Part shown: positions 1 through 33,866 of the stretch, in pieces
Layout of the letters: every line of letters starts with the position of its first letter
Position numbering within the stretch: the first letter of the stretch is position 1
NCBI RefSeq assembly: GCF_000315625.1
Contig: NW_005434407.1
Span: 19,825-53,754 of the forward strand
Length of the DNA stretch: 33,930 nucleotides
Direction: 5' to 3'
Origin: Guillardia theta CCMP2712
Taxonomy: Eukaryota > Protista > Cryptophyta
Translations under genes and position numbers: made by a program
The notes under the pieces: generated by a model
What the model was told of the DNA's origin: nothing
The model's database searches: none
Seen by the model: the letters and a program-made list of their open reading frames with translations, nothing else

Positions 1-976
1 TCTTGTCTCCGTTCACGTGATGTGTCACGTGACCGGTCAGGTGAGCTGTCAGCGGGGTCACGGACCCTGTCAGCCGGCTGACATGTCACGGGCCTGCTGA
101 CACGGTCCGCTGACCGGTCACGGCCGCCCGGAGAGATCAGGCCCCCGGCCAATCTCCGGACACTTAGCCTCCTGGCGGGCCTCCAGGGGGTCTGAGGCGG
201 GGCTAAAGGCTGCAGTCGGTCTACTGACGGGCCCGGCCGGCAGGATCCGTCGAGAAACAGGGGGGTCAAGGGAGGTTTTCTTCCCCCTGGGAGAAATGTC
301 CTATGGGTTTTTGGATCTGCGATATAAAAAAGTCTTGTCTCGGTCACGTGATGTGTCACGTGACCGGTCAGGTGAGCCTGTCAGCCGGGTCACGGACCCT
401 GTCAGCCGGCTGACATGTCACGGGCCTGCTGACACGGTCCGCTGACCGGTCACGGCCGCCCGGAGAGATCAGGCCCCCGGCCAATCTCCGGACACTTAGC
501 CTCCTGGCGGGCCTCCAGGGGGTCTGAGGCGGGGCTGAAGGCTGCAGTCGGTCTACTGACGGGCCCGGCCGGCAGGATCCGTCGAGAAACAGGGGGGTCT
601 AGGGAGGTTTTCTTCCCCCTGGGAGAAATGTCCTATGGGTTTTTGGATCTGCGATATAAAAAAGTCTTGTCTCGGTCACGTGATGTGTCACGTGACCGGT
701 CAGGTGAGCCTGTCAGCCGGGTCACGGACCCTGTCAGCCGGCTGACATGTCACGGGCCTGCTGACACGGTCCGCTGACCGGTCACGGCCGCCCGGAGAGA
801 TCAGGCCCCCGGCCAATCTCCGGACACTTAGCCTCCTGGCGGGCCTCCAGGGGGTCTGAGGCGGGGCTGAAGGCTGCAGTCGGTCGGAGGCTACTGACGG
901 GCCCGGCCGGCAGGATCCGTCGAGAAACAGGGGGGTCAAGGGAGGTTTTCTTCCTCCTGGGAGAAATGTCCTATGG
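1..976. repeat. GC-rich tandem repeat array, 332-bp unit, about 2.9 copies (1-332, 333-664, 665-976), open at the window edge
   Basis: TCTTGTCT(C) restarts at 1, 333 and 665. Units are near-identical; unit 3 has a 6-bp insertion (about 885-890) and stops at ...GAAATGTCCTATGG (976), where the sequence switches abruptly to AT-rich. Confidence 0.97.
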
Positions 977-5664: not shown

Positions 5665-6534
5665 ATGGAGATGAGTATGTTATACTTTTCTCCATATAGG
5701 GTATCAACAATCACATCAAACTTTGATATAATCAACATTGATGATGGATCAAAAGTGAAGATAGATCTGATGTTGTTATTCCATAACATAACAATCAGGG
5801 ATGGCAATATGAATTTTGTTTGGACACAGTGTGTTGATAAGGAGACCCAACAGGATATAACACGCGGAGAGTATCCGAACAAGAAGCGGAGGACTGCCTA
5901 TAAGAAGAACAGGAGGAAGTTTGACAATCAGATATCATTCTTGTTCAAGATAGATGATGGATACTATCCAAATGTCAAGGTATTCCAGAATGGGAATATA
6001 CAGATGACGGGATCTAGATCATTTGAGGATACAATCCCAGCCGTGGAGGCAATCTTGAGAGAGATACAGAGCATTGCAATGAAGGATATACAGATTATAT
6101 CTATTGATTACAAGAAGATAAAGTATGATAATTTCAAGGTTAGGCTCATTAATACGGATTTTAGGGTATATCAGGATCCGGAAATGACCGAGAGGTTCTA
6201 TTTGAAGCGTAAGGAGCTGCATAGGCTTCTTATTGAGAAGAATGAGATCATTGCCTGGTTCAATGCAAATACCTATCCTGGTGTTAAGATTGAGTATTGG
6301 TGGAACAAGGACAATCCTGACAATAAGGGAAAAAGAGATCTATCAAAGCCTGTCCCAACCAAGGGTGTGATAAGCGATATAAAAAAGATAACAATTGCAG
6401 TGTTCGAGAGTGGGAGCATACTCATCACAGGTGCTATTACATTTGAGCAGGTGAATGAGGCATATCAATACATTTGTGATTTCCTATCATTGCATGTTAA
6501 GAGCATTGCTATAAAATTTGCGAATAGCAAGTGA
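5665..6534 (+). CDS. TATA-box-binding protein-like
   Basis: Two TBP repeats: NVKVFQNGNIQMTG and YPGVKIEY...ITIAVFESGSILITGA. Confidence 0.9.
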   Translation: MEMSMLYFSPYRVSTITSNFDIINIDDGSKVKIDLMLLFHNITIRDGNMNFVWTQCVDKETQQDITRGEYPNKKRRTAYKKNRRKFDNQISFLFKIDDGYYPNVKVFQNGNIQMTGSRSFEDTIPAVEAILREIQSIAMKDIQIISIDYKKIKYDNFKVRLINTDFRVYQDPEMTERFYLKRKELHRLLIEKNEIIAWFNANTYPGVKIEYWWNKDNPDNKGKRDLSKPVPTKGVISDIKKITIAVFESGSILITGAITFEQVNEAYQYICDFLSLHVKSIAIKFANSK

Positions 6535-7150: not shown

Positions 7151-8482
7151 ATGTCACAATTGTTAAAATCATTGGTTGAGACTACAAAACAGGTGTATGA
7201 AGAGAAAGATATTTCCTATAGCAATAGCCTCTTAACAGTATTGAGAGATAAACACTATTGGCCAAAGCTACAGATAAAGAGATTTAGCAACAATCCTACC
7301 ATGGTTCTATTGCACAATACATACAAGAGAAACAATACCGAAGATTTCCAAGAGCTATATGATGAGTGTAGGAGTGTGATATTTGATTTTGCAAATACAG
7401 ACAATGCAGTGCTATCTTGTTCTACCAGCATCCCATTAAGGATGAGTGATGAGGAGTATGAACCAGATGATAATGATGTATGTGAGATTGCATATGATTC
7501 TACTCTGATATATGTTTATTTCAATAATGATAATTGGTTCTTTAGCACCACAAGCTGTACATCGGTGGATAGCTCCAAATTTTCACATCCTACAAAGAGG
7601 CATGGTACAATGTTTAATGAGGCATTGCAGGAGTTATTCCCCAGTGTGCAAGAGAATGTAAGAGAGCATTTTGTTACATATCTGAACAAGGAGCATGTTT
7701 ATGAGTTTGCTCTTGTGCACCATGAGAATACCAAATTCATTGATTATAGAGAGGAGCTTGGTGAGGGATACAAGAAGATATTTCATATTAGCACAAAGAT
7801 AAAATTTGGTAGTCAGATAAACCATAGGCATGCCCTGTCAGATATTGGGATAATGTATCCAGATGTGTTTGATGACCCTATGCAGGCAATTGATTATATA
7901 CGCAACAACAAAACATATGGTTTCATTGTGATAAGAGATAATAAGAAGGTCCTTAAGGTTTCATCCAAGTCTCTCCTGTTTCGTGAGGAGACAGATCATT
8001 GCAATCCAAATCCTTGGAGAAATCTAATCTGGATATATCAACAACAGAGGGAGAATTATTCCATAAATGAGTATATAAAAGAGCACAATATTGAGCTCTC
8101 TGTAGATAACAATGGAAATGAGATAGATGCACAGGATTTGATTGATACATGCATGCATACATTATGTGATCTCATATACAAGATGTATATCACCACAACA
8201 TCATATTATCCAAAATACAATAGATTTAAGATGTCAAAAGAGATAGATAAGAAGCTGCCTCCCAAGTTGCAGTTTCATTTAGCCCAACTAAGGTATCATC
8301 AGATAACAAAGTATAAGGATACAAAAGCAATCATAAAACCAGAGCATGTAATGGAGTATTTATGTAAAGATAATAATGTCAAGAATATCATATCATTGAT
8401 TAAGCTCATTGCAATAAATAAAACATTTGATATTCCTGAAAATGTTATTGAAAAATTTGAATTGATAAGAGGATATCTCTAA
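7151..8482 (+). CDS. Degenerate T4 Rnl1-like (RNA ligase fold) protein, probably catalytically inactive
   Basis: ECRSVIFD (cf. ECRGIMFE), IAYDSTLIYVY (cf. TKEDGSLVSTY), YEFALVHHEN and YGFIVIRDNKKVLKV (cf. EGYVAVMKDGSHFKIK). The ORF is certain; the fold is inferred. Confidence 0.6.
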   Translation: MSQLLKSLVETTKQVYEEKDISYSNSLLTVLRDKHYWPKLQIKRFSNNPTMVLLHNTYKRNNTEDFQELYDECRSVIFDFANTDNAVLSCSTSIPLRMSDEEYEPDDNDVCEIAYDSTLIYVYFNNDNWFFSTTSCTSVDSSKFSHPTKRHGTMFNEALQELFPSVQENVREHFVTYLNKEHVYEFALVHHENTKFIDYREELGEGYKKIFHISTKIKFGSQINHRHALSDIGIMYPDVFDDPMQAIDYIRNNKTYGFIVIRDNKKVLKVSSKSLLFREETDHCNPNPWRNLIWIYQQQRENYSINEYIKEHNIELSVDNNGNEIDAQDLIDTCMHTLCDLIYKMYITTTSYYPKYNRFKMSKEIDKKLPPKLQFHLAQLRYHQITKYKDTKAIIKPEHVMEYLCKDNNVKNIISLIKLIAINKTFDIPENVIEKFELIRGYL

Positions 8483-11343
8483 TTGATCTTCCTAAAGATA
8501 GCCCATCTGTTCAAGAAGCTGAATTCTTTAAGATTTGGATCATTATCCAATAGCTGAAGATTATCCTTGATATATTTATCGTTTGTGCTTGATATAGTTT
8601 TATTAAATGTGGTCTCAAACATCTCAGATGATTCTAATTTCAATCCAACCTCATTGCATTTATTTTCTAGGAGACTGAAACTGACAAGGTTTTCAGCAAT
8701 GAACTTTCCTGAATTTTCTATGTAGACATTTATCTGTTTTCCATAAGGACTTCTCTGGTTCTCTGAATAGTTCCTCTTGATTGCCCAAACAACTGCCTCA
8801 CTTGTCGGATCAATCCCAAGCAACGATCCATGGTTTGAATGCAATTTATCCTCAACGGTCTTTCCATCCATAAAGGTGCATATGAAGACACCATCCTTCT
8901 TCAGATTTGATACTACATTGTTGAGGAAGCCACCTAGGCTTGCCTCATCCTGGAAGAAATAGTGGATAGAGAACATGCAAGAGGCAACATCGAATGACAC
9001 ATTGTGATAATCATTAAAGATATTTAGATGGCTAAACTTCTTGTCTGAATAACCTCTCTTTCCTAAAACAATCTTCAAGATATCCTCACTTGTCTTATCA
9101 AGGCCCTTAGCTGCCTCTCCTGATTCTAGCTTATGCTTGCAATCCCCAATAACAAATATCATCGTTGGAAAATATCTATCCTTGTTTTCTTTTTTTGTCT
9201 TGTAATATTTGGTGAGCAATCTCTTGTATATACCACTCACAGGATTTTCTATGTTGTCTTTGACATAATCTACACCAAAGACAAACTTATATCGTGCAAA
9301 CATCCAACGATCTATATCAGAACCCTGACCACAAGCCAGTTCTATGATGTTTCCACGATTGCCTCCCTTTATAGCAGGATATTCATATAGCATGGACTTG
9401 ATTATCCTATTATGGAAGAAGATCATCTTAGATGATATAAGCTTGCTGCTATCCTTGTCATTGAACCTGTTGTAATACTTATCATCGCTGGACAGCTCAA
9501 CATCAATATCGCTCTCTGAAAATTCAATAGATGTCTTACCAGTGATCATATCGTATGTAATAGGCTTTGAGATAGAGCGCCATATGTTCATTGCCACATC
9601 CCAATCATTTGCAGTCTTTGTGATGGGACCTGATCCGAAGTTGTAGATCCTGTTCTTGTCATGTCTTATCCTGTTTGCAATCCAACGCCTCTCATTCGAT
9701 AACATCACATTCTGTGTATTGTATGAGAATTCAACCACGCTGTTGTTCAGTACAAGCTCATTTGTATCAGTTGTATAGCAATTCCCAGTATTCTCATTTA
9801 CTGCAATATGAGCCTTCTGTGCCTTACCCTCTAGAATGTACTCACGGAGCTCATAGATAGAATTCCTATTCCGTGGCTTATATCGCTTATCATATCTTCT
9901 TGTCAAGCCTGTCAATACATCAATCATCTCATTGTTCTCAATATTGAAACCAACATACAATTGGAATTCCTTGTACCTGCTCCCATCTCCATAGGTATGG
10001 AATATGCCCGTCTCCTTCACAATAAACTCGATTGTGTTCTGCTCGGGTGGTTTCCATTTGAATACCCTATCCCATTTCATGTTTGCAGAGACACTCACTG
10101 GCTTGTTTGCATAATAACCAAATACTGGGAGCTTCATTGGAGTGAATACCAGCCCATCAATCTTATAATTGTATGAACTGTGATTGCTTAAGATCTCATT
10201 GCACTTATCAAGGATTGTTTCTCCATCAGATGCATAGAGCTGTTGCTTAACCACAAATTCATGAGATGATGTAGTCTTCATCATGCTCACATGTTTCTTC
10301 ATTATATCATATCTATCGGGAATAAGAGGCAGGTCCTTCACAGATTTTCCATTTAGAAGATAAACATCGAATATTGCAAACAGATCATGCGTGGAATCGT
10401 TCTTGCGCTCTGAACATAAGACCAGTTCGCCATCAAATAGGCTATTCTTGAGTGCAGGTGCATTCAGGCCTGTGCCTCTCACATTCTTTATGTTGTTGAT
10501 AAGGAAGGCCTCACCATCTTTATCAACAAATAACAGGAACCTCTCTCCATCTGCTTTCTCACTCACTGCATAATTCTTCATAATAGATATATAGCCAAGA
10601 TTGTCAGCCCTTCCCATATTGATCCTCTCTAATGTTATGGGCTTTGGTGTGATCAATATAACATCATTTGTCATGGTCTGCAATCGATCATTCAGCATGA
10701 ATTTTATGCATGCAGAGTATTGATCTAAAACTGAATTCTGTTTTGCCATCAATAATGGCCGAATATTACCATACAATGCAAATTCCATCAGCTTGAGGGT
10801 TTCATCAATATCAATCTTGTTGTTCTTTACAACTATCTTGAAATAGTATGTGTAGTTTGCGAGCATGGCCTTGCTCTCTTTGAATGTTCTTGCAGGTCGC
10901 AGGCCATTCTTACATACCTCAACAATGTAATCACAATTGTCATCATAATATGTAACTCTTTTTTTGAGAGAGAAGGACTTTAATCCCTCATTTGAATAAT
11001 CTAATGCATCATTATTTGATAACTTGAAGAGGACTGCCTTGAATGCAGACTCGTAATAATCCTTGAAATTCTCTTCATAATCGATAACCTTGTGATATCT
11101 CTCTACACATTCCATGTTTCCTTGTGTATATTCTTTGATATCCGTAACTCCCTTCACTACCAATATTCCCTTATCATCAAGGATCTCTAATATCTGTTCA
11201 TCGATATCTCTCTTCAAATTTTTTGCCGAAAGAACATTATTGAACATATCAAAATTTGCACCATTGAGAAGACCATCAGAATATATAATCTCAAAGGTTA
11301 CATTAGACGAAGCATCAAACCTTTTTAATACCTCATCCATCAT
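8479..11343 (-). CDS. mRNA capping enzyme (divergent triphosphatase region + guanylyltransferase + cap N7-methyltransferase)
   Basis: GTase motifs SEKADGER, FDGELV, FAIFDVY, IDGLVFTP, KWKPPEQNT and RIRHDK; MTase motifs ELACGQGSD and CMFSIHYFF. First ATG is at 11343. Confidence 0.95.
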   Translation of the reverse strand: MMDEVLKRFDASSNVTFEIIYSDGLLNGANFDMFNNVLSAKNLKRDIDEQILEILDDKGILVVKGVTDIKEYTQGNMECVERYHKVIDYEENFKDYYESAFKAVLFKLSNNDALDYSNEGLKSFSLKKRVTYYDDNCDYIVEVCKNGLRPARTFKESKAMLANYTYYFKIVVKNNKIDIDETLKLMEFALYGNIRPLLMAKQNSVLDQYSACIKFMLNDRLQTMTNDVILITPKPITLERINMGRADNLGYISIMKNYAVSEKADGERFLLFVDKDGEAFLINNIKNVRGTGLNAPALKNSLFDGELVLCSERKNDSTHDLFAIFDVYLLNGKSVKDLPLIPDRYDIMKKHVSMMKTTSSHEFVVKQQLYASDGETILDKCNEILSNHSSYNYKIDGLVFTPMKLPVFGYYANKPVSVSANMKWDRVFKWKPPEQNTIEFIVKETGIFHTYGDGSRYKEFQLYVGFNIENNEMIDVLTGLTRRYDKRYKPRNRNSIYELREYILEGKAQKAHIAVNENTGNCYTTDTNELVLNNSVVEFSYNTQNVMLSNERRWIANRIRHDKNRIYNFGSGPITKTANDWDVAMNIWRSISKPITYDMITGKTSIEFSESDIDVELSSDDKYYNRFNDKDSSKLISSKMIFFHNRIIKSMLYEYPAIKGGNRGNIIELACGQGSDIDRWMFARYKFVFGVDYVKDNIENPVSGIYKRLLTKYYKTKKENKDRYFPTMIFVIGDCKHKLESGEAAKGLDKTSEDILKIVLGKRGYSDKKFSHLNIFNDYHNVSFDVASCMFSIHYFFQDEASLGGFLNNVVSNLKKDGVFICTFMDGKTVEDKLHSNHGSLLGIDPTSEAVVWAIKRNYSENQRSPYGKQINVYIENSGKFIAENLVSFSLLENKCNEVGLKLESSEMFETTFNKTISSTNDKYIKDNLQLLDNDPNLKEFSFLNRWAIFRKIN

Positions 11344-11395
11344 CAATTCTTACTTTAATAATATACAAAAATCTCTTATATGCTTCATTTTTTTA

Positions 11396-12562: not shown

Positions 12563-13303
12563 CTAATCATCATCAAAGTTAATATCATCAGCCTCATCTG
12601 GAAGATCATCAAATTCATCAATTTGCTCAATGTCATCATCGGCATCAATATCATTGTTGATCTCACTATCATCATCATCCTTATCATCGGTTGCAGACTT
12701 ATTATCATCATCATCATCCTCTTCCTCTTGCTCGATCTCTTCATCCTCATATTTAGGTTCTTCCTCGGTGTATTCATCCTTTTCACAAACAAAGTCTTGA
12801 TTGATCTCTTTATCATCCTTTATTATCTTCCCAATTATGTTGATGCATGTATCATTCAATTTGTATTTCTTTCCACCATACACCTCTACATTGACCATGT
12901 CACCAACCTTGAGAGTATCAATATCAATCTCAGAAACAATGCCCGCCGTGATCCTTGGGATTAAGAATTCGATGATTACATCACCATTGTAGGTATATTC
13001 CGCCTTTGCTGCTGTATGATTGATTGCAACAATACGGCTTCTCAACACTGTTCCTATAGATGGATTGCATATCTCTGCATTGCAAACAATATTGTAACAC
13101 AGCTGACCATTGAAATGCTGTTTGATAATCTCACCACCAGACCTCTTTATTATACTGACACTGCCCTTCTTGACATAGCCATGCTTCATGCACTTGCCCT
13201 CAATCTTGTCCTTTAATTTGCTCAACACCAATTCATTGATGTTTCTTTGTAGATCACTTGGAGATATATGGACAATAGTCTTGAATTTCACTAAAACAAA
13301 CAT
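12563..13303 (-). CDS. rpb7: DNA-directed RNA polymerase subunit RPB7 (E') with long acidic C-terminal tail
   Basis: KIEGKCMKHGYV...SIIKRSGG...CNAEICNP, followed by an S1/OB fold (LKVGDMVNVEVYG...INIIGKI). Confidence 0.88.
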   Translation of the reverse strand: MFVLVKFKTIVHISPSDLQRNINELVLSKLKDKIEGKCMKHGYVKKGSVSIIKRSGGEIIKQHFNGQLCYNIVCNAEICNPSIGTVLRSRIVAINHTAAKAEYTYNGDVIIEFLIPRITAGIVSEIDIDTLKVGDMVNVEVYGGKKYKLNDTCINIIGKIIKDDKEINQDFVCEKDEYTEEEPKYEDEEIEQEEEDDDDDNKSATDDKDDDDSEINNDIDADDDIEQIDEFDDLPDEADDINFDDD

Positions 13304-13934: not shown

Positions 13935-14444
13935 ATGTATAACTTTATAGAGCCTGTAATACTTAGTGGCACAGACGGTGTGATTACCTGTTTCAATCTC
14001 ATGATTGGATTAGGTGCTGCAGACTTTGACAAGAAACTGATAATGATCATAATTCTTATAGCAATCATTGGTGATTCTATCAGCATGGCTATCTCATACT
14101 TCAATAGCAAGCTGATGGAGACCAAACAGATATTGGATTGGGGGCTTATCCTTCATTCATTATACAATATACTAGCCTTTGTTTTCTTTGGAACACTATC
14201 CCTAGTTATATATCTATACATTACAGACAGACCAACAGTTCTCAATGCATACATATCGATAATCATCCCATTGTTGCTTCTAGGATTATTGCAGATGACC
14301 TATAGAAATGGCAAAGTATCTTTTCTTATAACACTCGTGCTTGGAATGATAGGATCTGTAGTATCATATGTTGCAGGAACTCTTATAAAGATTGTAAATG
14401 AGAGTGTAAAGGACAACAGTGATGTGATAAACAATAGTATATAA
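13935..14444 (+). CDS. VIT1/CCC1-family iron/manganese transporter-like, short form
   Basis: ILSGTDGVITCFNLMIGLGAA (TM1 Asp) and IGDSISMAISYFNS (TM2 Met); five hydrophobic segments. Confidence 0.8.
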   Translation: MYNFIEPVILSGTDGVITCFNLMIGLGAADFDKKLIMIIILIAIIGDSISMAISYFNSKLMETKQILDWGLILHSLYNILAFVFFGTLSLVIYLYITDRPTVLNAYISIIIPLLLLGLLQMTYRNGKVSFLITLVLGMIGSVVSYVAGTLIKIVNESVKDNSDVINNSI

Positions 14445-15906: not shown

Positions 15907-16191
15907 TCATGGATCGATGCGTTAAGTTTGATAAATTTTTTTTATCATGACACTCTGTATGAATATCTTGTAGACATCATATGATGATGTGTTGTGACAT
16001 TGCATTAGATCCTAAAATAAAAACACTGATGTAGATGACAACATACAACCTCAGAATACGCTTTCTTTCTATGGAAAATCTCTTTATATTATAATCATAT
16101 GCAGGCATGTTGAGGAATACTATATAAGAATAATCAACAATCATGTGCTTCAGACTAAAGTGTTCAAGAAAATATGTAAGATATCTAATAA

Positions 16192-17301
16192 ATGGACACT
16201 TTGATTTCTTCTCCAGAACCAGTTACTCTCAAAGAACAGATCATGTATAGGATAAAATGGGAACACAAACGCATTGTACATGAAGATGCTGTTGATTATC
16301 TCGAAAAAATCCTCCGCCAACTTGTGCAAGCCTTCATTGATGCTGCTGTTCATATCAAGGACCCCAAGTACAAGACAATGCGATTGGTTGATATGCTTGT
16401 TGGTATACAGATGATACTCAGTATTTCTTATGAGATGCCTGTAAAAACAAAGGTCAACCAAGTTATCAAATATTACAATTATCTTATCCATAAATGCAAT
16501 CTAACTGCAAATGCTGCTATGGCTAAAATGCAAGATATTGAGTTCAAGGCAAACACATTCCAAGAGATGTTCAAGAATTCCTATCCGAACATAAGGGTAT
16601 GCAATGAGGCCTATATTGCCCTACAAGCAGTTTTAGGCCTGATCTTGAGCGACCTGTTCAACACATTCTCATTTCAAAATGTGAGAAATGGATACAAGCT
16701 AGACTTTGTCAAATCTGTCATAGACAAGACCATCTCCTACAGGAATATGTTCTATAGACATAAATACGAACCCACATCTATAGAGATGGAGGCCTTGCCG
16801 CCATTGACAAAGAGCATTTACGACAATCTCATATCTAAGATCCGTGGAACTTGTAAACGGGTAGCACCCGATGCTATGCAACACATACAGTCTCTTGCTG
16901 CAGGCCTGTTGAATAGAATCCTGAAGATCATCCATAAAGACACCAAATGTTCACATGACTATGACTATCTTTATACGGTGCTGCATAAAAATATGCTTGC
17001 AAATCAGCTCTTGACACAGTGTTATGAGTCGTGGTTCGAAAATAATGATATATCATTGAAGACAATAGTTGAGCAGTTCAAGAAAGATACCAAAATCCAA
17101 CATGAGACCATTGTCATTTGGATCAATATGCTATCAGACCCACAGGCTCCAATATTGAATGAAAGCACCATATGGATGATCCATCTGATAGTTGAGTCAT
17201 ATATTATCAACATCCTCGATAAGTCTTGCACATATGCCAAATACATGCAGAGAGCTATCATCACCAGGAAATACATAGAGGTGGTCATGGAATATGTCTG
17301 A
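16192..17301 (+). CDS. Fused histone quadruplet, order H2B-H2A-H4-H3 (divergent)
   Basis: Four consecutive histone-fold-like segments: VHEDAVDYLEKILRQLVQAFIDAA..KYKTMRLVDMLVGIQMIL (H2B); IEFKANTFQEMFK..IRVCNEAYIALQAVLGLILSDLF (H2A); LTKSIYDNL..CKRVAPDAMQHIQSLAAGLLNRIL (H4); LNESTIWMIHLIVESYIINILDKSCTYAKYMQRAIITRKYIEVV (H3). Confidence 0.75.
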   Translation: MDTLISSPEPVTLKEQIMYRIKWEHKRIVHEDAVDYLEKILRQLVQAFIDAAVHIKDPKYKTMRLVDMLVGIQMILSISYEMPVKTKVNQVIKYYNYLIHKCNLTANAAMAKMQDIEFKANTFQEMFKNSYPNIRVCNEAYIALQAVLGLILSDLFNTFSFQNVRNGYKLDFVKSVIDKTISYRNMFYRHKYEPTSIEMEALPPLTKSIYDNLISKIRGTCKRVAPDAMQHIQSLAAGLLNRILKIIHKDTKCSHDYDYLYTVLHKNMLANQLLTQCYESWFENNDISLKTIVEQFKKDTKIQHETIVIWINMLSDPQAPILNESTIWMIHLIVESYIINILDKSCTYAKYMQRAIITRKYIEVVMEYV

Positions 17302-17490: not shown

Positions 17491-17796
17491 CTAGACACCA
17501 TCTTGGTTTGGGTCAAAGTTTAGGAAACATCTAAGCCATGTGATGTCCTTAAAGCGCTTAGGCACTATATGGGACCTAGGCTTCTTGTATGGCCAGCTAT
17601 AGATGCCAAGATCCTTGCATGCCTTTTTCAATGATGTGAGTGAGATTCCGAGAGTGTTAGCAGCATCTCTCTGTTTGAGATGAAAGAGCTGAGCGATGTC
17701 ATTATGTGTCAGACGGACAATCCTGCGTATATAGTGGCTTCTAATGTTTCTTCTGGGATATATAGATATGATATGCTTTTCAGGACTGTGATCCAT
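17491..17796 (-). CDS. RWP-RK domain transcription factor (RKD/MID/NIN-like DNA-binding domain)
   Basis: LTHNDIAQLFHLKQRDAANTLGISLTSLKKACKDLGIYSWPYKK matches the consensus L..YFHLP..EAAK.LG...T.LKK.CR..GI.RWP.RK. Confidence 0.9.
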   Translation of the reverse strand: MDHSPEKHIISIYPRRNIRSHYIRRIVRLTHNDIAQLFHLKQRDAANTLGISLTSLKKACKDLGIYSWPYKKPRSHIVPKRFKDITWLRCFLNFDPNQDGV

Positions 17797-20102: not shown

Positions 20103-21845
20103 TTATGGATTATCTTGAGAAACAGGTTGTAGATTATCTAATTGCTGCACTAGAAACAAATAGTGTTCCCGTAAGATCTGTCTTAGACTATGTGCTGTGT
20201 TGTCCTCAATACCTGGATTGCGCAATATTAGTTGTTGAATGAAGGATTGCATCGAGCTCATAATGCTGTTTTGATTTGTGATCAGCATGCTGAAGAGCAC
20301 GTTTATGTTATTGAGATCTGTAAAAGAATGCCTTTTAGATGTTGTGTGAATTGTGCAATGCACATACCTGTTTGCAGATTTATAGGTAGGACCTGCTGCG
20401 TATTGGCTTCAGGCCTTTGTCTCGTTGTTTTTTTGCGTTTCTCTGCAGAGCAAGATTAGTTGAGATAGGATATAATCATCCTGAATACTCTCAGGTGGAT
20501 TGTCTGTTGGAGCTTGCTTGTCGATAGCCTGCTGTTTATTTGCCCTCCTCTTGAGGAGTTCTGTTTGAAGGGCCTCTGCTTGAATAATCCTTCTCTGGGT
20601 AGGTTCATCTTGCTCATAGCACGGATACTGCTGCTGAGGGTCTGTGTTTGATTGGATTGTGCACTCCTCGTTTGCATGTGCTTGTGCTTGTGCTGCTTGA
20701 ATAGATGTCAATAAATAGAGAGAGCATGTGATTTAAGGGCTTACACAGCAGAAAGTCCTTGTAAGAGCCGCTTGGCTTGTCAAGATTGGATAGTGCATGA
20801 TCTATAAAATTAGAAACCTTAGAGCTCCCTTGTGATAAGGATATCTCCTCTGTAGGGGTGTTGTCATCCCTTATATATGGAGCAGCAGAGGGTATTGTGT
20901 AATTGCTTGTTTCCTGCCCATCATTGTCTGATTCTTCCAATCCTGTCCTTGTATCATCATTAGCTGCTTCTTGGCTGTCTGGCAGTTCATCAATCCTATC
21001 AAAGGATGGTTCACTGCTTATATTGATATAAGATATGTCCTTGTTCATGCTAGTGAAAGATGTGACGTACGCATCGTAGATCTCCATAAATCTTGAGGCA
21101 TCACCACATGGTTTTTTCCTTATATCATTCCAAAAATCACTCTTATTGAAGAATTCTTCATTGGTGCATACAGGTTCCAACAGGCCCATGAAATTCTTGT
21201 GATAAATCTCGTGAGGTTCCTCCATAACTCGGATAAATGGGCACAGCTCCTTGAAATAATGAAAGATAGATATGAAAGATGGCAGCTTTCTTATTGAGAT
21301 CCATTCTATGATAGGATAGTCCGGATTTGTCATCTCAATGTATGGGTTGTACCATTCCGTAAGAGCCATGAGGGTGTTGTTGAACATTACAAGATTGTGC
21401 ACTATTTTCGGATGAAGCCCAATATCAATAAGATGCTGTGGATGATCATTTATAGGATAATTGTTGAACATGTGCAAGGGCAACCTATTTCCCTTCACAA
21501 ATGGCACATAGAGATTTCTTGTAAGGAAGAAGCAATATATATGATAGTCTGTCAATTGTGAGAGTTTAACCTGCTTGGATTTATGTCTTATCAATACATT
21601 GCCACCTTTCTGTTCTAGATAGAATGTCTTGACCTTGAACATTATATTGTCATGATCAGACATGAATGCATTTATCGGAATAAGGATGATTTCATCCACA
21701 TTGTCACAAGAGAACTGGAACAGGTATACAATGCTCTCAATAGCATAATTACATATGCTATTATACCGTATCACCTCCTTGAGGAGCACACTGAGGATTG
21801 ATGTTGTTCCTAACAGATGTATAGTAGATGTCTCTCTCCAGAAAC
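20103..21845 (-). pseudogene. Fragmented large hypothetical gene (ORF pieces 20614-21936, 20409-20711, 20103-20363)
   Basis: Three consecutive or overlapping same-strand coding-like pieces in different frames. The 5' end collides with the DUF4116 gene without an intergenic region. Confidence 0.45.
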
Positions 21846-23568
21846 TTGCTGTGCTTTGCAATATGCAAGTGAAGACCTGAAAAGAGATAAAGAGGTTGTG
21901 ATGTGTGCTGTCAAAGGACACGGTTGTGCATTGCAATATGCAAGTGTAGATTTAAAGTGTGATAGAGAGGTTGTAATGTGTGCTATTGAAAGAAATGGAT
22001 GTGCTCTTCAATATGCAAGTGCAGACCTAAGAAGAGATAAAGAGGTTGTGATGTGTGCTATTCATAATGATAGTTCTGCTCTAAAGTTTGCAGATGAAAC
22101 AATAAAGGATGATTATGATGTTATCATAAAAGCAGCAAAAACATGTAGATTTAGTTTAACACACATTACAGATAAAGCAAAGAATGACAAAGAGTTAGCA
22201 TTTCGGCTTGTAAAAATCAATAGTGATAATATGAAATATTTATCTGATAAGTTAAAATGTGATAAAGATATCATTGTAGAAGCTGTTAAAACAAAACCTT
22301 TCTATGTAAAGGATCTAACAAATGAACAAAAGAACAATAAAGAGCTAGTATTGGAGCTAATAAAGCATTCTATATACACAATTCAATTTGTGTCTGATAA
22401 TTTGAAAGATGATTATGATGTTGTCATAGAAACTGTTAAAAGAGATGGAAAATTCCTTAAAGAGACATCTAGTAGAATGAGAAAGAACCATGATGTTGTA
22501 TATGAGGCAGTAAAGTCATCAGACGGCAGCACTTTTGAATTTGCCGACAAGACCTTGAAGGCAGATAGAGAGTTTGTTGCTAGGTTAGTCGAAATTGATG
22601 GAAAAAGTCTATTGTTTGCTGATAGAAGCATAAGAGATGATGTTGAATTGATTGTAAAGGCAGCCAGCAAAAACAGTTGGTACAAACAATATCAAGACAA
22701 TAAAACATTTATTGATAAGGTCTTATCATCCGGCAGGTGCATGTTTAGAAAATTCATACTAGCTATATTTAAAGGCAAGGAAGCATTATTGCATGATGAT
22801 AATATAATAACGAAACTAGTTTCAAGCAATGGCATGTTATTGGATATTGTACCATTAGAATTAAGAGCAAAGAGGCATATTGCACTTGCAGCTATTGAAC
22901 AATGTGGGATTGCATATGCATTCGTGCCAGAGACATTAAAACAAGATAAAGAGATAATTATGGCAGCACTCAAGAATTACCCGCCTATATTTGGGCATAT
23001 ACCTGAAACAATGAGAAATGATAGAGATATAGCACTAGAGGCCATAAGGGTCAATAAGACAGTTATCAAATACATCCCTCTAGATATAGTATATGACACA
23101 AAGTTTATTTTGAAAATATTATTGCATAGGCTGGTTACAAGCTCTGATTTAAAGTCATACAATACTGGTGTATATCATATCGTGCTTCATTTTGTTGATA
23201 AGCTAATAAATGGTGAAGACATGTTCGAGTTTGTCATGCACATAAAGGGTTTAAATGAAAAAGCAGTCTGTGATATGATACTTACCAACCTTGATTGCTT
23301 TCTCGAATCTGATTATTGTGGCAAGGTGTTAGAATTCTTCCTAAAGTACTATTACACAACCCTGCTAAATCACAATATTGCACTCAATCTCATTTATAAC
23401 AATGAGGACGCACTATTGTTCCTAGACTCAATAAATGTGAAGCTCTTATCATTGCGTGAATTAAACCCCGACCATGCTTATGACGATAGTGAAGTTATGA
23501 AGCATATGATTCAAAAGCACCATGGTAAAGATGTGTTATTTTTGGAGCTAGCAGGATCTATGAAATAA
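21817..23568 (+). CDS. DUF4116 repeat protein, possibly 5'-truncated
   Basis: Many roughly 25-aa repeats of the form GCALQYASxDLKxDKEVVMCAV; the first three are near-identical 75-bp units. Confidence 0.88.
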   Translation: MYSRCLSPETCCALQYASEDLKRDKEVVMCAVKGHGCALQYASVDLKCDREVVMCAIERNGCALQYASADLRRDKEVVMCAIHNDSSALKFADETIKDDYDVIIKAAKTCRFSLTHITDKAKNDKELAFRLVKINSDNMKYLSDKLKCDKDIIVEAVKTKPFYVKDLTNEQKNNKELVLELIKHSIYTIQFVSDNLKDDYDVVIETVKRDGKFLKETSSRMRKNHDVVYEAVKSSDGSTFEFADKTLKADREFVARLVEIDGKSLLFADRSIRDDVELIVKAASKNSWYKQYQDNKTFIDKVLSSGRCMFRKFILAIFKGKEALLHDDNIITKLVSSNGMLLDIVPLELRAKRHIALAAIEQCGIAYAFVPETLKQDKEIIMAALKNYPPIFGHIPETMRNDRDIALEAIRVNKTVIKYIPLDIVYDTKFILKILLHRLVTSSDLKSYNTGVYHIVLHFVDKLINGEDMFEFVMHIKGLNEKAVCDMILTNLDCFLESDYCGKVLEFFLKYYYTTLLNHNIALNLIYNNEDALLFLDSINVKLLSLRELNPDHAYDDSEVMKHMIQKHHGKDVLFLELAGSMK

Positions 23569-24330: not shown

Positions 24331-24978
24331 CTACAAATCTCTTATGCGCTCTTCACACTCTAGCCTTCTTCTCTTGTGGCTGCATTGTTCATCTTCAACC
24401 TTGCAGTCCTTGCAATCATGCCTTTTGTTGTTGTGGATGCAAATAGAGCCCCCTTTACACTGTATTGTTGTATTATGCTCACATATAGAACTACCTCCAC
24501 AGTCCTTGCAATAGCTTCTAAATATGTTATGCTCACGTATGGATCTGCCTTTACACTCCTTGCATTGGCGCCTTTGTCTATTGTGATGACATATTGAGCC
24601 ACCTCCACATTCCTTGCATACACTTCTCACTCTATTGTGCTGACATATTGAACTTCCTCCACACTCCTTACATTGGCTCTTTATTCTATCATGTGGACAT
24701 ATTGAACCACCTCCACACTCCTTGCATCGGTTCTTTATTCTATTATGCTGACATATAGAGCCACCTCCACACTCCTTGCATAGGCTCCTTTGTCTCTTAT
24801 GCTGACATATAGAGCCACCTCCACACTCCTTGCATCGGCTCCTTTGTCTCTTATGCTGACATATAGCACTACCGCCACATTCCTTGCATTGATCTTTTAC
24901 TCTGTTATGATTACAGTATCTCTTACAGGTCTTACATTCACCTATAGTTCGATTGTGTTTACAGATATTGCTGTCCAT
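24331..24978 (-). CDS. Cys/His-rich 18-aa repeat protein (CxHxRxRxxCKECGGGSI), putative zinc-binding; paralog 1
   Basis: About 9-10 repeats of 54 bp. ATG 24978 aligns with the paralog start and has AAAATGA 34 nt upstream. Confidence 0.85.
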   Translation of the reverse strand: MDSNICKHNRTIGECKTCKRYCNHNRVKDQCKECGGSAICQHKRQRSRCKECGGGSICQHKRQRSLCKECGGGSICQHNRIKNRCKECGGGSICPHDRIKSQCKECGGSSICQHNRVRSVCKECGGGSICHHNRQRRQCKECKGRSIREHNIFRSYCKDCGGSSICEHNTTIQCKGGSICIHNNKRHDCKDCKVEDEQCSHKRRRLECEERIRDL

Positions 24979-25137
24979 AATGCAGTGTTTATTCAATAAA
25001 GATAGAAGATATTCATTTTACTACAAATCTTTTGTACATTCTTGAAAATTTAGATTCCTTCTATTGTGGTTGCATTTCTGGAGAGAAACAAAAGACACAA
25101 TGAATAAAAACGAATTTGTTGATGTAAGCTTTTCTAA

Positions 25138-27200: not shown

Positions 27201-27806
27201 CTACAAATCTCTTATGCATTCTTCACAGTCTAGCCTTCTTCTCTTGTGGCAGCATTGTTCATCGATCTTGCAGTCCTTACAAATACACCTCCGCTTGTTG
27301 TGGATGCAGATTGAACCACCACCACACTCCTTGCATTGACTCTTTCGCCTGTTGTGCTGACATATGGAGCCACCTCCACACTCCTTGCATGTGCTTCTTA
27401 GTCTATTGTGTGGGCATATAGAGCCAGCTCCACACTCCTTGCATTGATGCTTTCTTTTATTGTGCGGACATATATATCTTGTTTCGCCATCTCCACACTC
27501 CTTGCATCGACTTCTTCTTCTGTTGTGCTTGCATATAGAGCCACCTCCACACTCCTTGCATCGACTTCTTCTTTTGTTGTGCTTGCATATAGAGCCACCA
27601 CCACACTCCTTGCATTGACTTCGTGTTATGTTGTGCTGACATATAGCGCTACCACCACACTCCTTGCATAGACTTTTTCTTATGTTGTGCTGACATATAG
27701 AGCCACCACCACACTCCTTACATATGCTTCTTACTCTGTTGTGAATACAATATCTCTTACAGGTATTACATTCACTCTTGGTTCGATTGTGTTTACAGAT
27801 ATCCAT
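27201..27806 (-). CDS. Cys/His-rich 18-aa repeat protein; paralog 2
   Basis: Same repeat unit and near-identical termini (ICKHNRT..EC.TCKRYC; HKRRRL.CEE.IRDL) as 24331-24978. Confidence 0.88.
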   Translation of the reverse strand: MDICKHNRTKSECNTCKRYCIHNRVRSICKECGGGSICQHNIRKSLCKECGGSAICQHNITRSQCKECGGGSICKHNKRRSRCKECGGGSICKHNRRRSRCKECGDGETRYICPHNKRKHQCKECGAGSICPHNRLRSTCKECGGGSICQHNRRKSQCKECGGGSICIHNKRRCICKDCKIDEQCCHKRRRLDCEECIRDL

Positions 27807-28155: not shown

Positions 28156-29333
28156 ATGAGTTACACACTGTCGCCTCTAGTTGATGAAACCAAGCTTAAG
28201 ATCGAGGGTCTCTGTTTGAACGATAATCCAAAGGCAATGATTATTGTGAAGAATAGGATTAAACAGATGACCGATAAGGCTTGGAGATATCTATCAGGCA
28301 ACAACAATGCTGCTGACATCCTTGTTGAGAACATCGATAGGGTTGATTTCAATGCTCTAAAGAATACCAAGATCTATGCCAAGATCGTCAAGCACAAGCC
28401 TGATATGATTGACTGGTCTGTCCTCTCATCAAAGGATGATGAGGACGCCATCCAACTGTTGAGGGATAACCTTGACAAGGTTGATTGGAGGGTCCTTTCT
28501 GCCAACAAGGGTGCCATCGACATCTTGAAGGACAACCTTGATAATGTATATTGGAGTGAGTTGTCAAAGAATGAGAATGCCATCGAGATCTTGAAGGCAA
28601 AACCCGATAAGGTGGTCCATGACTCTCTATGGTTTAACAACAACCCCGAGGCAGCAGATATCTTAGACGTATCAAGGTGTGATCCAGTGCCCCCTCTGAC
28701 CATCAACAACTTTCTAAAGAGGTTAGACCAAGAGAGATACTCTAGATTTATGGAGGACAATGCATCGATCATATCGGAGAAAATCGATCATCTAGAATGG
28801 CTTGATGAGATATGTCTGGATTTGTTAAACATTATTGTAGAGAAGAAAAAGATCTTATCGAGGAGAATGCGTGGAATGAGATCTGCATGAATCCATTTGC
28901 CGAAAAGATTGTAAAGGACAACATGGATAATATTGAATGGAATGGAATCAGTTACAATAAGAGCGATTGGGCCTATGATCTGCTTATGGAGAACAAGAAA
29001 AATATTGTTTATAGTGGAGTGCTAAACAATAGCAATCCTAGATGGTCCGATACAATCAAGAAGATTCTTCATCGAAATTATGAAGATGCAATTATTGTTA
29101 TGATCAAGGCTGGAGACGAAAACTGGAAATTGAAATTGATATCAAATGAAGAAACAAGCAATATATTGGCTCAATACTATAATATAGAGGACTTCCATCA
29201 AGAGCTGCATGATGCTTTAAGTACCTTTGTCAAGGATATAAAAAAGACAGAGGAGATTGAATTCCTCAAGACACATCTAAAAATAAAGCTATTCTACAAG
29301 TATATCAGCAGATGTCCAGCTATCTTTCAATAG
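28156..29333 (+). CDS. NCLDV-type W-x2-LS-x-N repeat protein, frameshifted at the A5 run 28846-28850
   Basis: Repeats such as DKVDWRVLSANKGAIDILKDN continue in the second ORF (AWNEICMNPFA, IEWNGISYN). One extra A joins them as EKKKDLIEENAW. Confidence 0.75.
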
Positions 29334-33440: not shown

Positions 33441-33866
33441 TTATGAGGAGATATTCTGTAAGAGTTTCTGTTGTTGATATTTTTCACGCCTCTTGCGGTT
33501 GATCTCATCCTTGTTCTGATGGTACCAATTCAATGAGGCTTGAGAATGATATATGCGATATTGTTGCATTTGTTCGGGAGTGAATTTTTGGATGCGTTCC
33601 TTGTTGTATTCATTCAACCTCTGTTTTTCTTCAGGTGACATATTGTGATATCTTTGAAGATTTGTATGATGGACCTGTTGGTACTCTCGTTGATATCTTC
33701 GTTGATAGTTCCGCTGATATTCAATCTTTTTTTCAGGCCAATAAGTCTTTTGATATTCCTTTTGATATTCCCTTTGGTAGTTCCGTTGATATTCCTTTCT
33801 TTTGAGTTTCTTCAATTCATCAGGTGACAACTCACTTAGGGTGGTAATAGAAGAAGGGTTCTCCAT
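33441..33866 (-). CDS. Basic helical protein with (R/K)(E/N)YQ tetrad repeats
   Basis: KEYQRNYQREYQKEYQK, YQRNYQRRYQREYQ and NKDEINRKRREKY. Confidence 0.7.
   Translation of the reverse strand: MENPSSITTLSELSPDELKKLKRKEYQRNYQREYQKEYQKTYWPEKKIEYQRNYQRRYQREYQQVHHTNLQRYHNMSPEEKQRLNEYNKERIQKFTPEQMQQYRIYHSQASLNWYHQNKDEINRKRREKYQQQKLLQNISS

What the first reader, a model, noticed from the sequence alone, without database searches (positions are those of the whole stretch)
16192..17301. Single-polypeptide half-nucleosome: tailless H2B-H2A-H4-H3 histone quadruplet
Seen: four histone-fold-like segments in 369 aa, almost no basic tails and strong divergence (H4 alpha3 and the H2A C-terminus are weak). 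Knowledge: fused histone doublets to quadruplets occur in Nucleocytoviricota and can self-assemble nucleosomes. Inference: a homodimer would form a full octamer-like core. It lacks the AAAATGA motif, consistent with late or virion expression.
Basis: partly seen in the sequence, partly recalled or inferred. Interest (0 to 1): 0.8.

Follow-up and report, generated by a model that had tools for sequence, protein, structure and literature searches.

The report
Probable divergent viral four-histone-fold protein
An intact 369-residue gene in giant-virus DNA inside the alga Guillardia theta probably encodes four fused histone-like folds, a kind of viral protein already known; the evidence is low-confidence modelling and its weak positive charge makes true nucleosome formation doubtful.

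Summary
The ORF is real: 16192..17301 (+), 369 aa, intact, in a Mimiviridae-like giant-virus insertion at the end of Guillardia theta CCMP2712 contig JH993231.1.

Sequence methods do not show histones. The only hint is a sub-threshold Pfam Histone match on the last 41 residues (E 0.011). An exhaustive search of 1.84 billion representatives found one distant full-length relative (22% identity) and one decayed fragment in the same alga.

Two low-confidence AlphaFold2 models (pLDDT 43 and 47) give an all-helical protein with four short-long-short helix units. Single-residue bridges join loop 1 of one unit to loop 2 of its partner in each half.

Foldseek on the whole model puts double histone folds on top in both libraries: Melbournevirus and Marseillevirus H2B-H2A doublets, single-chain H2A.Z-H2B, and the SOS histone domain (TM up to 0.65, E above 0.1). 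The C-terminal half alone also ranks double histone folds first, but only weakly (TM 0.27-0.41).

The quadruplet reading is therefore plausible (about 0.55) but unproven, and type assignment is supported only for the H2B-H2A-like half. Net charge is +6, and the relative's core is -16, which argues against a canonical DNA-wrapping octamer. An H2B-H2A-H4-H3-like quadruplet is already published for a mimivirus-related genome, so this would be a divergent variant.

The parts
16192..17301 (+). Intact ORF, 369 aa plus stop: the candidate four-histone-fold protein
   Evidence: One search lists the ORF. One search shows that the public 352-aa model starts at Met18. Searches show the relative P0002 aligning from residue 12, which favours the ATG at 16192.
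15907..16191 (+). Upstream intergenic region, AT-rich, without the AAAAATGA motif seen about 40 nt upstream of 8 other ORFs
16228..16527 (+). Unit 1 (aa 13-112): helices 13-25, 31-53 and 65-76, then a long helix 84-112. Read as H2B-like (alpha1-alpha2-alpha3 plus alphaC).
   Evidence: DSSP of the model, with a bridge residue at aa 29 in loop 1. pLDDT is 55-70 over aa 11-50. The type label is an inference.
16552..16752 (+). Unit 2 (aa 121-187): helices 121-128, 134-161 and 170-179, then a short helix 181-187. Read as H2A-like without a docking domain.
   Evidence: DSSP, with a bridge residue at aa 168 in loop 2. pLDDT is 53-61 over aa 150-180.
16753..16800 (+). Linker between the two halves (aa 188-203), non-helical and proline-containing
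   Evidence: DSSP; translation.
16801..17034 (+). Unit 3 (aa 204-281): helices 204-220, 226-251 and 256-281. Read as H4-like, with the third helix running on into the connector.
   Evidence: Searches give the same helices in both models, with a bridge residue at aa 224. The fold matches are weak. The type label is an inference.
17056..17295 (+). Unit 4 (aa 289-368): helices 289-299, 304-315, 324-351 and 359-368. Read as H3-like (alphaN, alpha1, alpha2, alpha3). The protein ends one residue later.
   Evidence: with a bridge residue at aa 357. Pfam Histone matches aa 326-366 to profile positions 79-119 of 122 at E 0.011. CENP-T_C histone fold scores E 0.13.

Best explanation
The gene most likely encodes one polypeptide made of four very divergent histone folds. 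These pair within the chain into two pseudo-dimers.

- The N half (aa 13-187) resembles viral H2B-H2A doublets.
- The C half (aa 204-368) is laid out like an H4-H3 doublet.

The gene belongs to a Mimiviridae-like giant virus whose DNA lies in the Guillardia theta genome.

Inferred mechanism: each pseudo-dimer offers loop1-loop2 surfaces carrying basic residues that the only relative also has (K61 with R135, and R223 with R359). Through these the protein would bind and bend viral DNA, acting as a histone-like organiser in the viral factory or virion. It might pair with a second copy through the last unit.

What is shown: the ORF, its viral context, the helix pattern and the fold matches. What is inferred: the histone types of units 3 and 4, DNA binding, dimerisation, and any octamer-like particle.

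I put four histone folds at about 0.55, and four folds together with DNA organisation at about 0.4.
For: - **Whole-protein model.** It is all-helical with four short-long-short units. Single bridge residues sit at aa 29 and 168. The C-half model has them at aa 224 and 357. That is loop 1 of one unit against loop 2 of its partner, as in a histone handshake.
- **Foldseek against PDB.** Every match with probability of at least 0.5 is a histone dimer or double histone fold: 7n8n_B (0.97), the SOS histone domain 1q9c (0.97, TM 0.60), single-chain H2A.Z-H2B 7dlx, 6ae8 and 4nft (TM 0.61-0.65, rmsd about 5 A), and 9cvt_B (TM 0.64). PMC13088155 identifies 7n8n_B as the H2A-H2B-like doublet.
- **Foldseek against BFVD.** Top matches are Clandestinovirus H2B/H2A (0.92), Marseillevirus H2B/H2A (0.91) and Melbournevirus miniH2B-H2A (TM 0.64, rmsd 4.9).
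- **C half alone.** The highest-probability matches are again double histone folds: 9cvt_C and 9cvt_D, 1q9c, 3ksy and 1f1e.
- **Sequence hint.** Pfam Histone (E 0.011) and CENP-T_C (E 0.13) fall on alpha2-L2-alpha3 of unit 4, in register with the end of the protein.
- **Context.** Nearby genes are typical of a giant virus: capping enzyme, TBP-like, Rpb7-like, dUTPase and dCMP deaminase.
- **Precedent.** An H2B-H2A-H4-H3-like quadruplet is already reported in a mimivirus-related genome.
- **Conserved basic residues.** 14 basic positions are shared with P0002, several of them in loops 1 and 2.
Against: - Model confidence is poor: mean pLDDT 42.9 and 46.7, pTM 0.38 and 0.35, with an alignment only 3 rows deep.
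- No Foldseek match reaches E 0.1.
- The C half has TM of only 0.27-0.41 and rmsd above 11 A.
- No sequence method reaches significance. The relative P0002 gives no histone hit at all.
- The two halves show no detectable similarity to each other.
- K+R is only 12% and net charge +6. The core of P0002 is net -16, and its basic tail is encoded from a contig-end inverted repeat, so it is doubtful. Such charges are far from those of DNA-wrapping histones.
- Melbournevirus miniH2B-H2A, the best-fitting BFVD (viral-library) match by TM, binds DNA poorly on its own.
- There is no expression evidence for the gene.
Confidence: 0.45

Rival explanations
1. The protein has four histone folds but is not a nucleosome protein. 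It would be a protein-protein scaffold like the non-nucleosomal double histone folds (SOS histone domain, SPT3, TAF pairs). It might work with the virus's own TBP-like factor and transcription genes nearby.
For: - The SOS histone domain ranks as high as the viral histone doublets.
- Charge is weak (+6) and the homologue's core is acidic at -16.
- There are no tails and no H2A docking domain.
- A TBP-like gene, an Rpb7-like gene, a capping enzyme and an RWP-RK gene lie in the same window.
- PMC13088155 lists SPT3 and SOS as double histone folds.
Against: - The best-fitting matches are nucleosomal H2A-H2B types.
- Basic residues are conserved in loops 1 and 2.
- The only SAGA match has probability 0.06.
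- No link to the TBP-like gene exists beyond lying about 10 kb away.
Confidence: 0.2
2. Only the N half is a double histone fold, an H2B-H2A-like doublet. It would be fused to an unrelated helical C-terminal domain, as Talbert et al. describe for the Loki's Castle genome LCMAC101.
For: - All matches with TM above 0.5 cover about 190 columns, one half of the protein.
- The best pLDDT lies in aa 11-50 and 150-190.
- The C half alone never exceeds TM 0.41.
- Talbert et al. describe an H2B-H2A doublet fused to about 190 unrelated residues.
Against: - The C-half model still ranks double histone folds first.
- It has the loop1-loop2 bridge residues.
- The only Pfam histone hint lies in the C half.
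- Foldseek did not report which half of the whole model was aligned, so assigning those matches to the N half is my inference.
Confidence: 0.15
3. The protein has no histone fold at all. It would be an orphan helical viral protein of unknown role, and the histone matches would arise because a near-single-sequence AlphaFold2 run pushed a helical sequence into a familiar fold.
For: - pLDDT is below 50 for 294 of 369 residues.
- All Foldseek E-values exceed 0.1.
- No profile search is significant.
- Only one distant relative exists among 1.84 billion representatives.
Against: - Three searches in two libraries, with two separately computed models, agree on the same fold class.
- TM of 0.6-0.65 to about 175-residue targets is a same-fold level of similarity.
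- The weak Pfam hit is to the same family and in register.
- Low-probability matches in the same lists are a random mix of helical proteins, so the histone hits are not simply what any helical model returns.
Confidence: 0.2
4. This question is independent of the fold. The copy in this window may be a silent relic of a past infection that does nothing in the alga today. Its function would then be a property of the free virus only.
For: - The region lies in a host genome assembly next to a GC-rich 332-bp tandem repeat.
- A second, decayed partial copy sits on another G. theta scaffold.
- No transcript-derived record of the full-length protein was found.
Against: - The ORF and most neighbouring ORFs are intact, and the promoter-like motif is kept. 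This points to a recent insertion or a maintained element.
- Expression was not actually tested here.
Confidence: 0.3

Closest known systems
H2B-H2A-H4-H3-like histone quadruplet of the mimivirus-related metagenomic genome ERX552270.89 (Talbert et al. 2022, PMC9145170)
   Same: It has the same proposed order of four fused folds in one chain and the same broad viral lineage (Imitervirales or Mimiviridae-like). It is also known only from sequence.
   Different: That protein was recognised by sequence similarity to histones, and this one is not. Direct comparison was not possible because no tool here returns its sequence. That genome also encodes an H2A-like singlet, and none was seen in this 34-kb window.
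Histone quadruplets HQA, HQB and HQC (Irwin and Richards 2024, PMC11222145)
   Same: They are single chains with all four core-histone domains joined by linkers. They are predicted to dimerise into pseudo-octamers and never co-occur with other histones.
   Different: - They were found with histone HMMs at E below 1e-5, whereas this protein fails that criterion.
- Their middle linkers are about 24-56 residues, against 16 here.
- They have a positively charged DNA-binding edge and protected about 148 bp in E. coli. Here net charge is +6 and nothing has been tested.
- Histone repeats were reported mainly in the marseillevirus, iridovirus and medusavirus clades.
Marseilleviridae histone doublets H2B-H2A, H4-H3 and miniH2B-H2A (Liu et al. 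2021, PMC8357426; PDB 7n8n, 9cvt)
   Same: They are among the best structural matches of the model: 7n8n_B at probability 0.97, and miniH2B-H2A and 9cvt_B at TM 0.64. The fold order within each half is the same. The short H2A C-terminus resembles the mini variant.
   Different: They are two separate doublets rather than one chain. They share up to about 30% identity with eukaryotic histones, while here identity in the structural alignments is 7-14%. They are shown to be essential, to be packaged and to form nucleosome-like particles.
Non-nucleosomal double histone folds (SOS histone domain 1q9c; SPT3; Methanopyrus kandleri 1f1e)
   Same: They match the models as well as the viral histones do. 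They have two folds in one chain without long basic tails.
   Different: They have one doublet rather than two, and they are cellular proteins with regulatory or archaeal chromatin roles.

Membership tests
Histone-fold superfamily (Pfam PF00125 and relatives) | Significant sequence-profile match to a histone-fold family | tested here: not met
   PF00125 scores E 0.011 and 16.4 bits against a cut-off of 26.4, on aa 326-366 only. CENP-T_C scores E 0.13. Nothing was found for the other three segments, for P0002, in NCBIfam, or in PDB sequence or profile searches.
Histone-fold superfamily (Pfam PF00125 and relatives) | Short-long-short helix unit (alpha1-L1-alpha2-L2-alpha3), paired head to tail with a partner unit through L1-L2 contacts | tested here: inconclusive
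   Four such units, and bridge residues at aa 29 and 168 and at aa 224 and 357, appear in both models. But pLDDT is 43-47.
Double histone fold, H2B-H2A type | Overall fold match (TM above 0.5) of one half to solved H2A-H2B dimers or doublets | tested here: met
   TM normalised to the target is 0.52-0.65 for 7n8n_B, 7dlx, 6ae8, 4nft, 1q9c and 9cvt_B, and 0.64 for Melbournevirus miniH2B-H2A. Caveats: the model is low-confidence, E-values are 0.3-4, and Foldseek does not report which half was aligned.
Double histone fold, H4-H3 type | Overall fold match of the C half to solved H3-H4 dimers or doublets | tested here: inconclusive
   Double histone folds rank first, but TM is 0.27-0.41 and rmsd 12-18 A. 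The H4-H3-like doublet 7n8n_A reaches only probability 0.09.
Viral histone quadruplet (Irwin and Richards 2024; Talbert et al. 2022) | Each of four domains assignable to H2A, H2B, H3 or H4 by HMM or phylogeny | tested here: not met
   No domain reaches an HMM threshold. Published quadruplets were defined at E below 1e-5.
Viral histone quadruplet (Irwin and Richards 2024; Talbert et al. 2022) | No other histone genes in the same genome | tested here: inconclusive
   No other ORF of at least 100 aa in the window hits a histone family. Only 34 kb of the viral genome is available.
Viral histone quadruplet (Irwin and Richards 2024; Talbert et al. 2022) | Basic DNA-binding edge | tested here: inconclusive
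   Net charge is +6 and K+R 12.2%. The core of relative P0002 is net -16. 14 basic positions are shared, some of them in L1 and L2. No reliable surface model exists.
Viral histone quadruplet (Irwin and Richards 2024; Talbert et al. 2022) | Homodimer forming a pseudo-octamer that organises about 150 bp of DNA | not testable with these tools
   No multimer or protein-DNA prediction is available here.

The most novel reading that the evidence does not exclude
The most novel reading not excluded: this is a lineage of fused four-histone proteins that sequence profiles cannot see, tailless and nearly neutral in charge. It would belong to a mimivirus-like virus of cryptophyte algae and be preserved in a culturable model alga. 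It would still assemble a nucleosome-like or half-nucleosome particle. That would mean viral histone diversity is much wider than HMM surveys show, and that nucleosome-like architecture tolerates far less positive charge than assumed.
Probability: 0.25. Interest if true: 0.7.

Novelty: new variant of a known kind. Interest (0 to 1): 0.5.

Why it matters
[quoted passage not shown] All published examples were found by sequence similarity to histones.

If this protein is a true quadruplet, it shows that such surveys miss very divergent members. It would add a cryptophyte-associated, mimivirus-like example lying in the genome of a culturable, sequenced alga, where transcript and protein evidence can be looked up. 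It would also give a natural test of how little positive charge a histone-fold assembly can have.

If it is not a quadruplet, the case is a useful warning about reading histone folds from helix patterns and low-confidence models.

Tried and rejected
**Searches that found nothing useful**
- Word-indexed protein searches with the protein, with the 3-row profile and with the N-half profile. They returned only the protein itself and P0002.
- Scans of viral and metagenome contigs with the profile found no relative.
- PDB sequence and profile searches for the whole protein, both halves and the last quarter returned only chance hits: an engineered OspA repeat, HSP82, Prp8, malate synthase and IL-13.
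- Pfam on the segments of P0002 and NCBIfam gave no histone.
- hhalign of the N half against the C half showed no internal repeat signal (probability 0.7%).
- Look-ups of the 369-aa product and of the 896-aa neighbour by exact sequence found nothing on record.

**Ideas rejected**
- The missing AAAATGA does not mark late expression. Most ORFs here lack it.
- The basic C-terminal tail of P0002 is not evidence for DNA binding. It is encoded from a contig-end inverted repeat.

- Direct comparison with published quadruplets or Marseillevirus doublets. No tool returns their sequences, and none may be typed.
- Determining which half of the whole-protein model Foldseek aligned. The tool does not report it.

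- I used none of them in any call or as evidence.
- The script printed alignment bounds of the broken second copy. They are not repeated here.

Full report
**The gene.** An ATG-to-stop ORF runs from 16192 to 17301 on the + strand and encodes 369 aa. A frame this long in DNA of 35-37% GC is not a chance event. The protein is rich in Ile, Leu, Lys and Tyr. K+R is 12.2%, D+E is 10.6%, net charge is +6 and pI is 8.7. The public gene model starts at Met18 and gives 352 aa (P0001).

**Where it lies.**
- The exact-sequence look-up places the gene on contig JH993231.1 (53,754 bp) of assembly GCA_000315625.1.
- That assembly is Guillardia theta CCMP2712, as shown by the name attached to the fragment protein P0003 and by the taxonomy look-up.
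- The window is the last 33.9 kb of that contig.
- Bases 1-976 are a 332-bp tandem repeat at 63% GC. The AT-rich region starts directly after it.
- The AT-rich region has the gene content of a nucleocytoplasmic large DNA virus: a fused mRNA capping enzyme, a polynucleotide kinase, a TBP-like protein, an Rpb7-like protein, dCMP deaminase, dUTPase, a DUF4116 repeat protein and an RWP-RK protein.
- Gallot-Lavallee and Blanc (PMC5294986) list G. theta among genomes with a Mimiviridae-like core gene.
- This is an alga-associated giant-virus insertion, not a virus of animals, people or crops.

**Relatives.**
- The exhaustive HMMER search of 1.84 billion representatives has no length filter, so it also covers shorter and longer kin. 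It found three proteins: the gene itself, P0002 and P0003.
- P0002 is 404 aa and 22% identical over aa 12-349 (E 3e-6). It comes from a 1.36-kb contig of run SRR23967302.
- P0003 is a 68-aa fragment.
- Word-indexed searches with the protein, the profile and the N half found nothing more. Scans of viral and metagenome contigs also found nothing.
- P0003 belongs to a second, decayed copy on G. theta scaffold JH992972.1 and on three JGI contigs, beside retroelement genes. That copy keeps only two pieces of the C-terminal half, about 100 of 369 codons. The pieces lie in two reading frames (at least one frameshift), there is one internal deletion, and both ends are missing.
- Fragments of two other window genes lie in the same loci. 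Related viral DNA therefore entered the nuclear genome at least twice.

**Sequence tests for histones.** These fail.
- Pfam gives only a sub-threshold Histone match on aa 326-366 (profile positions 79-119 of 122, E 0.011). A CENP-T histone-fold hint at E 0.13 falls on the same stretch.
- The other three segments, P0002, NCBIfam, and all PDB sequence and profile searches show no histone.
- The two halves are not detectably similar to each other.

**Structure prediction.**
- With the 3-row alignment, AlphaFold2 gave a low-confidence whole-protein model: mean pLDDT 42.9 and pTM 0.38.
- It is all-helical, with helices at 13-25, 31-53, 65-76, 84-112, 121-128, 134-161, 170-179, 181-187, 204-220, 226-251, 256-281, 289-299, 304-315, 324-351 and 359-368. 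Isolated bridge residues sit at aa 29 and 168.
- A separate model of aa 198-369 (pLDDT 46.7) reproduced the same helices, with bridge residues at aa 224 and 357.
- The pattern is four short-long-short units. In each half, loop 1 of the first unit touches loop 2 of the second. By established knowledge of histone dimers, that is the geometry of a histone handshake.

**Fold searches.**
- Whole model against PDB. Every match with probability of at least 0.5 is a histone pair or double histone fold: Melbournevirus particle 7n8n_B (0.97), the SOS histone domain 1q9c (0.97, TM 0.60), single-chain H2A.Z-H2B constructs 7dlx, 6ae8 and 4nft (TM 0.61-0.65, rmsd about 5 A over about 190 columns), and 9cvt_B (TM 0.64). 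A review identifies 7n8n chain B as the H2A-H2B-like doublet and chain A as the H3-H4-like one.
- Whole model against BFVD. The top matches are Clandestinovirus H2B/H2A (0.92), Marseillevirus H2B/H2A (0.91) and Melbournevirus miniH2B-H2A (TM 0.64, rmsd 4.9).
- C half alone against PDB. Double histone folds rank first (9cvt_D, 9cvt_C, 1q9c, 3ksy, 1f1e), but with TM 0.27-0.41 and probability of at most 0.69.
- No E-value is below 0.1 in any search.
- My reading: one half, most likely the better-modelled N half, has the fold of an H2B-H2A doublet. The C half is compatible with a second doublet but this is not shown. Foldseek does not report which half of the whole model it aligned.

**Domain map (inference from the helices and from known histone architecture).**

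| Unit | Residues | Reading | Basis |
|---|---|---|---|
| 1 | 13-76, plus long helix 84-112 | H2B with its C-terminal helix | helix layout |
| 2 | 121-179, plus short helix 181-187 | H2A without a docking domain | helix layout |
| Linker | 188-203 | non-helical | DSSP |
| 3 | 204 to about 268 | H4-like | third helix runs on to residue 281 |
| 4 | 289-368 | H3-like | two short helices, then a long and a short one, as for H3 with its N-terminal helix; the chain ends one residue later |

It is also the order of the two Marseillevirus doublets placed in series.

**Charge.** This is the main argument against a true nucleosome. The protein is only +6. The conserved core of P0002 is -16. The basic tail of P0002 is encoded from a 25-nt inverted repeat at the contig end and may be an artefact. 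On the other side, 14 basic positions are shared by the two proteins. They include K61 and R135, which lie in or beside loop 2 of unit 1 and loop 1 of unit 2. They also include R223 and R359, which lie in or beside loop 1 of unit 3 and loop 2 of unit 4. These are the places where histone pairs touch DNA. Liu et al. report that the mini H2B-H2A doublet, the closest-fitting viral-library match, binds DNA poorly on its own.

**Most likely explanation and rivals.**
- Best explanation: a very divergent four-histone-fold protein of the virus, forming two pseudo-dimers within one chain and organising viral DNA through its loop surfaces, possibly as a dimer. I put four folds at about 0.55, and four folds plus DNA organisation at about 0.4.
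- Rival 1: the same fold used as a non-DNA scaffold, like the SOS domain, SPT3 or TAF pairs, perhaps with the viral TBP-like factor (0.2).
- Rival 2: a doublet fused to an unrelated helical domain (0.15).
- Rival 3: no histone fold at all (0.2).
- Independently of the fold, the copy in the alga may be a silent relic (0.3).

**Comparison with what is known.**
- Fused viral histones are established. Marseilleviridae doublets form nucleosome-like particles (PMC8357426).
- Thirteen quadruplets in three configurations were described, and some protected about 148 bp in E. coli (PMC11222145).
- Talbert et al. list an H2B-H2A-H4-H3-like quadruplet in the mimivirus-related genome ERX552270.89. They raise the idea that a single quadruplet could form a hemisome (PMC9145170).
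- The kind, the order and the lineage are therefore not new.
- What would be new: divergence beyond HMM detection, the near-neutral charge, the lack of tails and docking domain, and a location in a culturable alga's genome.
- I do not file the protein as a member of the quadruplet family. The defining sequence criterion was tested and not met. The resemblance is structural and provisional.

**The promoter remark.**
- AAAATGA occurs 18 times in the window, no more than chance (19 expected).
- Even so, AAAAATGA sits 36-45 nt upstream of 8 of 32 ORF starts. That is far more than the roughly 0.1 expected, so it is probably a promoter element.
- The gene lacks it, but so do 20 of the 32 ORFs. No timing can be inferred.

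**Slips and limits.**
- I used none of them.
- One search printed alignment bounds of the broken second copy. They are not repeated here.
- No comparator histone sequence could be obtained through the tools, so no direct alignment to published viral histones was made.

Noticed in passing
window 1-976: A 332-bp tandem repeat (2.9 copies, 97% matches, GC 0.63) directly abuts the AT-rich virus-like region, which starts near 977. It is probably the edge of the insertion in the host contig, or a terminal repeat. The window runs to the end of contig JH993231.1.
   Followed up: partly
window, upstream of ORFs starting at 5665, 7151, 26269 and 28156 (+) and at 11346, 13303, 27806 and 29998 (-): AAAAATGA lies 36-45 nt upstream of 8 of 32 ORF starts, although its total count equals chance. 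It looks like a promoter element, similar in kind to the early motif known from mimiviruses.
   Followed up: partly
window 17491-17796 (-): The convergent neighbour is a 101-aa protein with an RWP-RK domain (E 6e-16). This is a transcription-factor domain of plants, algae and protists, seen here in a viral region.
   Followed up: no
window 24471-24889 and 27316-27743: Two arrays of 54-bp tandem repeats (7.8 copies each, 79% matches) lie inside ORFs 24331-24996 (-) and 27201-27806 (-). The units are similar, suggesting a pair of repeat-protein paralogues with no Pfam match.
   Followed up: no
window 21817-23568 (+): A 583-aa protein made of 11 DUF4116 repeats (E 2e-116). Its start overlaps the TTG-started ORF 20614-21936 (-) by about 120 nt, so one of the two starts is probably wrong.
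   Followed up: no
window 5665-6534 (+), 12563-13303 (-), 8479-11346 (-): A TBP-like protein, an Rpb7-like RNA polymerase subunit and a fused capping enzyme (guanylyltransferase plus N7-methyltransferase). The virus carries its own transcription apparatus.
   Followed up: partly
L003 (G. theta scaffold JH992972.1) and L004-L006 (JGI 3300017164 contigs): A decayed patchwork holds fragments of three window genes: the candidate histone gene, ORF 28156-28890 and ORF 33441-33866. It lies beside retrotransposon genes, and the same block occurs in several sequence contexts. It is a second, older insertion of related viral DNA.
   Followed up: partly
L002:1-1363: The contig of the only full-length relative (GC about 0.48, against 0.37 here) carries a 25-nt inverted repeat at 3-27 and 1208-1232, plus an 18-nt direct repeat at its 3' end. 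The relative's Arg/Gly-rich tail is encoded from the repeat onward, so it may be an assembly artefact or part of a small element's end.
   Followed up: partly
window 13935-14444 (+): A 169-aa ORF matches only the first about 55 positions of the VIT1 (vacuolar iron transporter) family (E 2e-9). It is either a fragment or a short derivative of a cellular gene.
   Followed up: no
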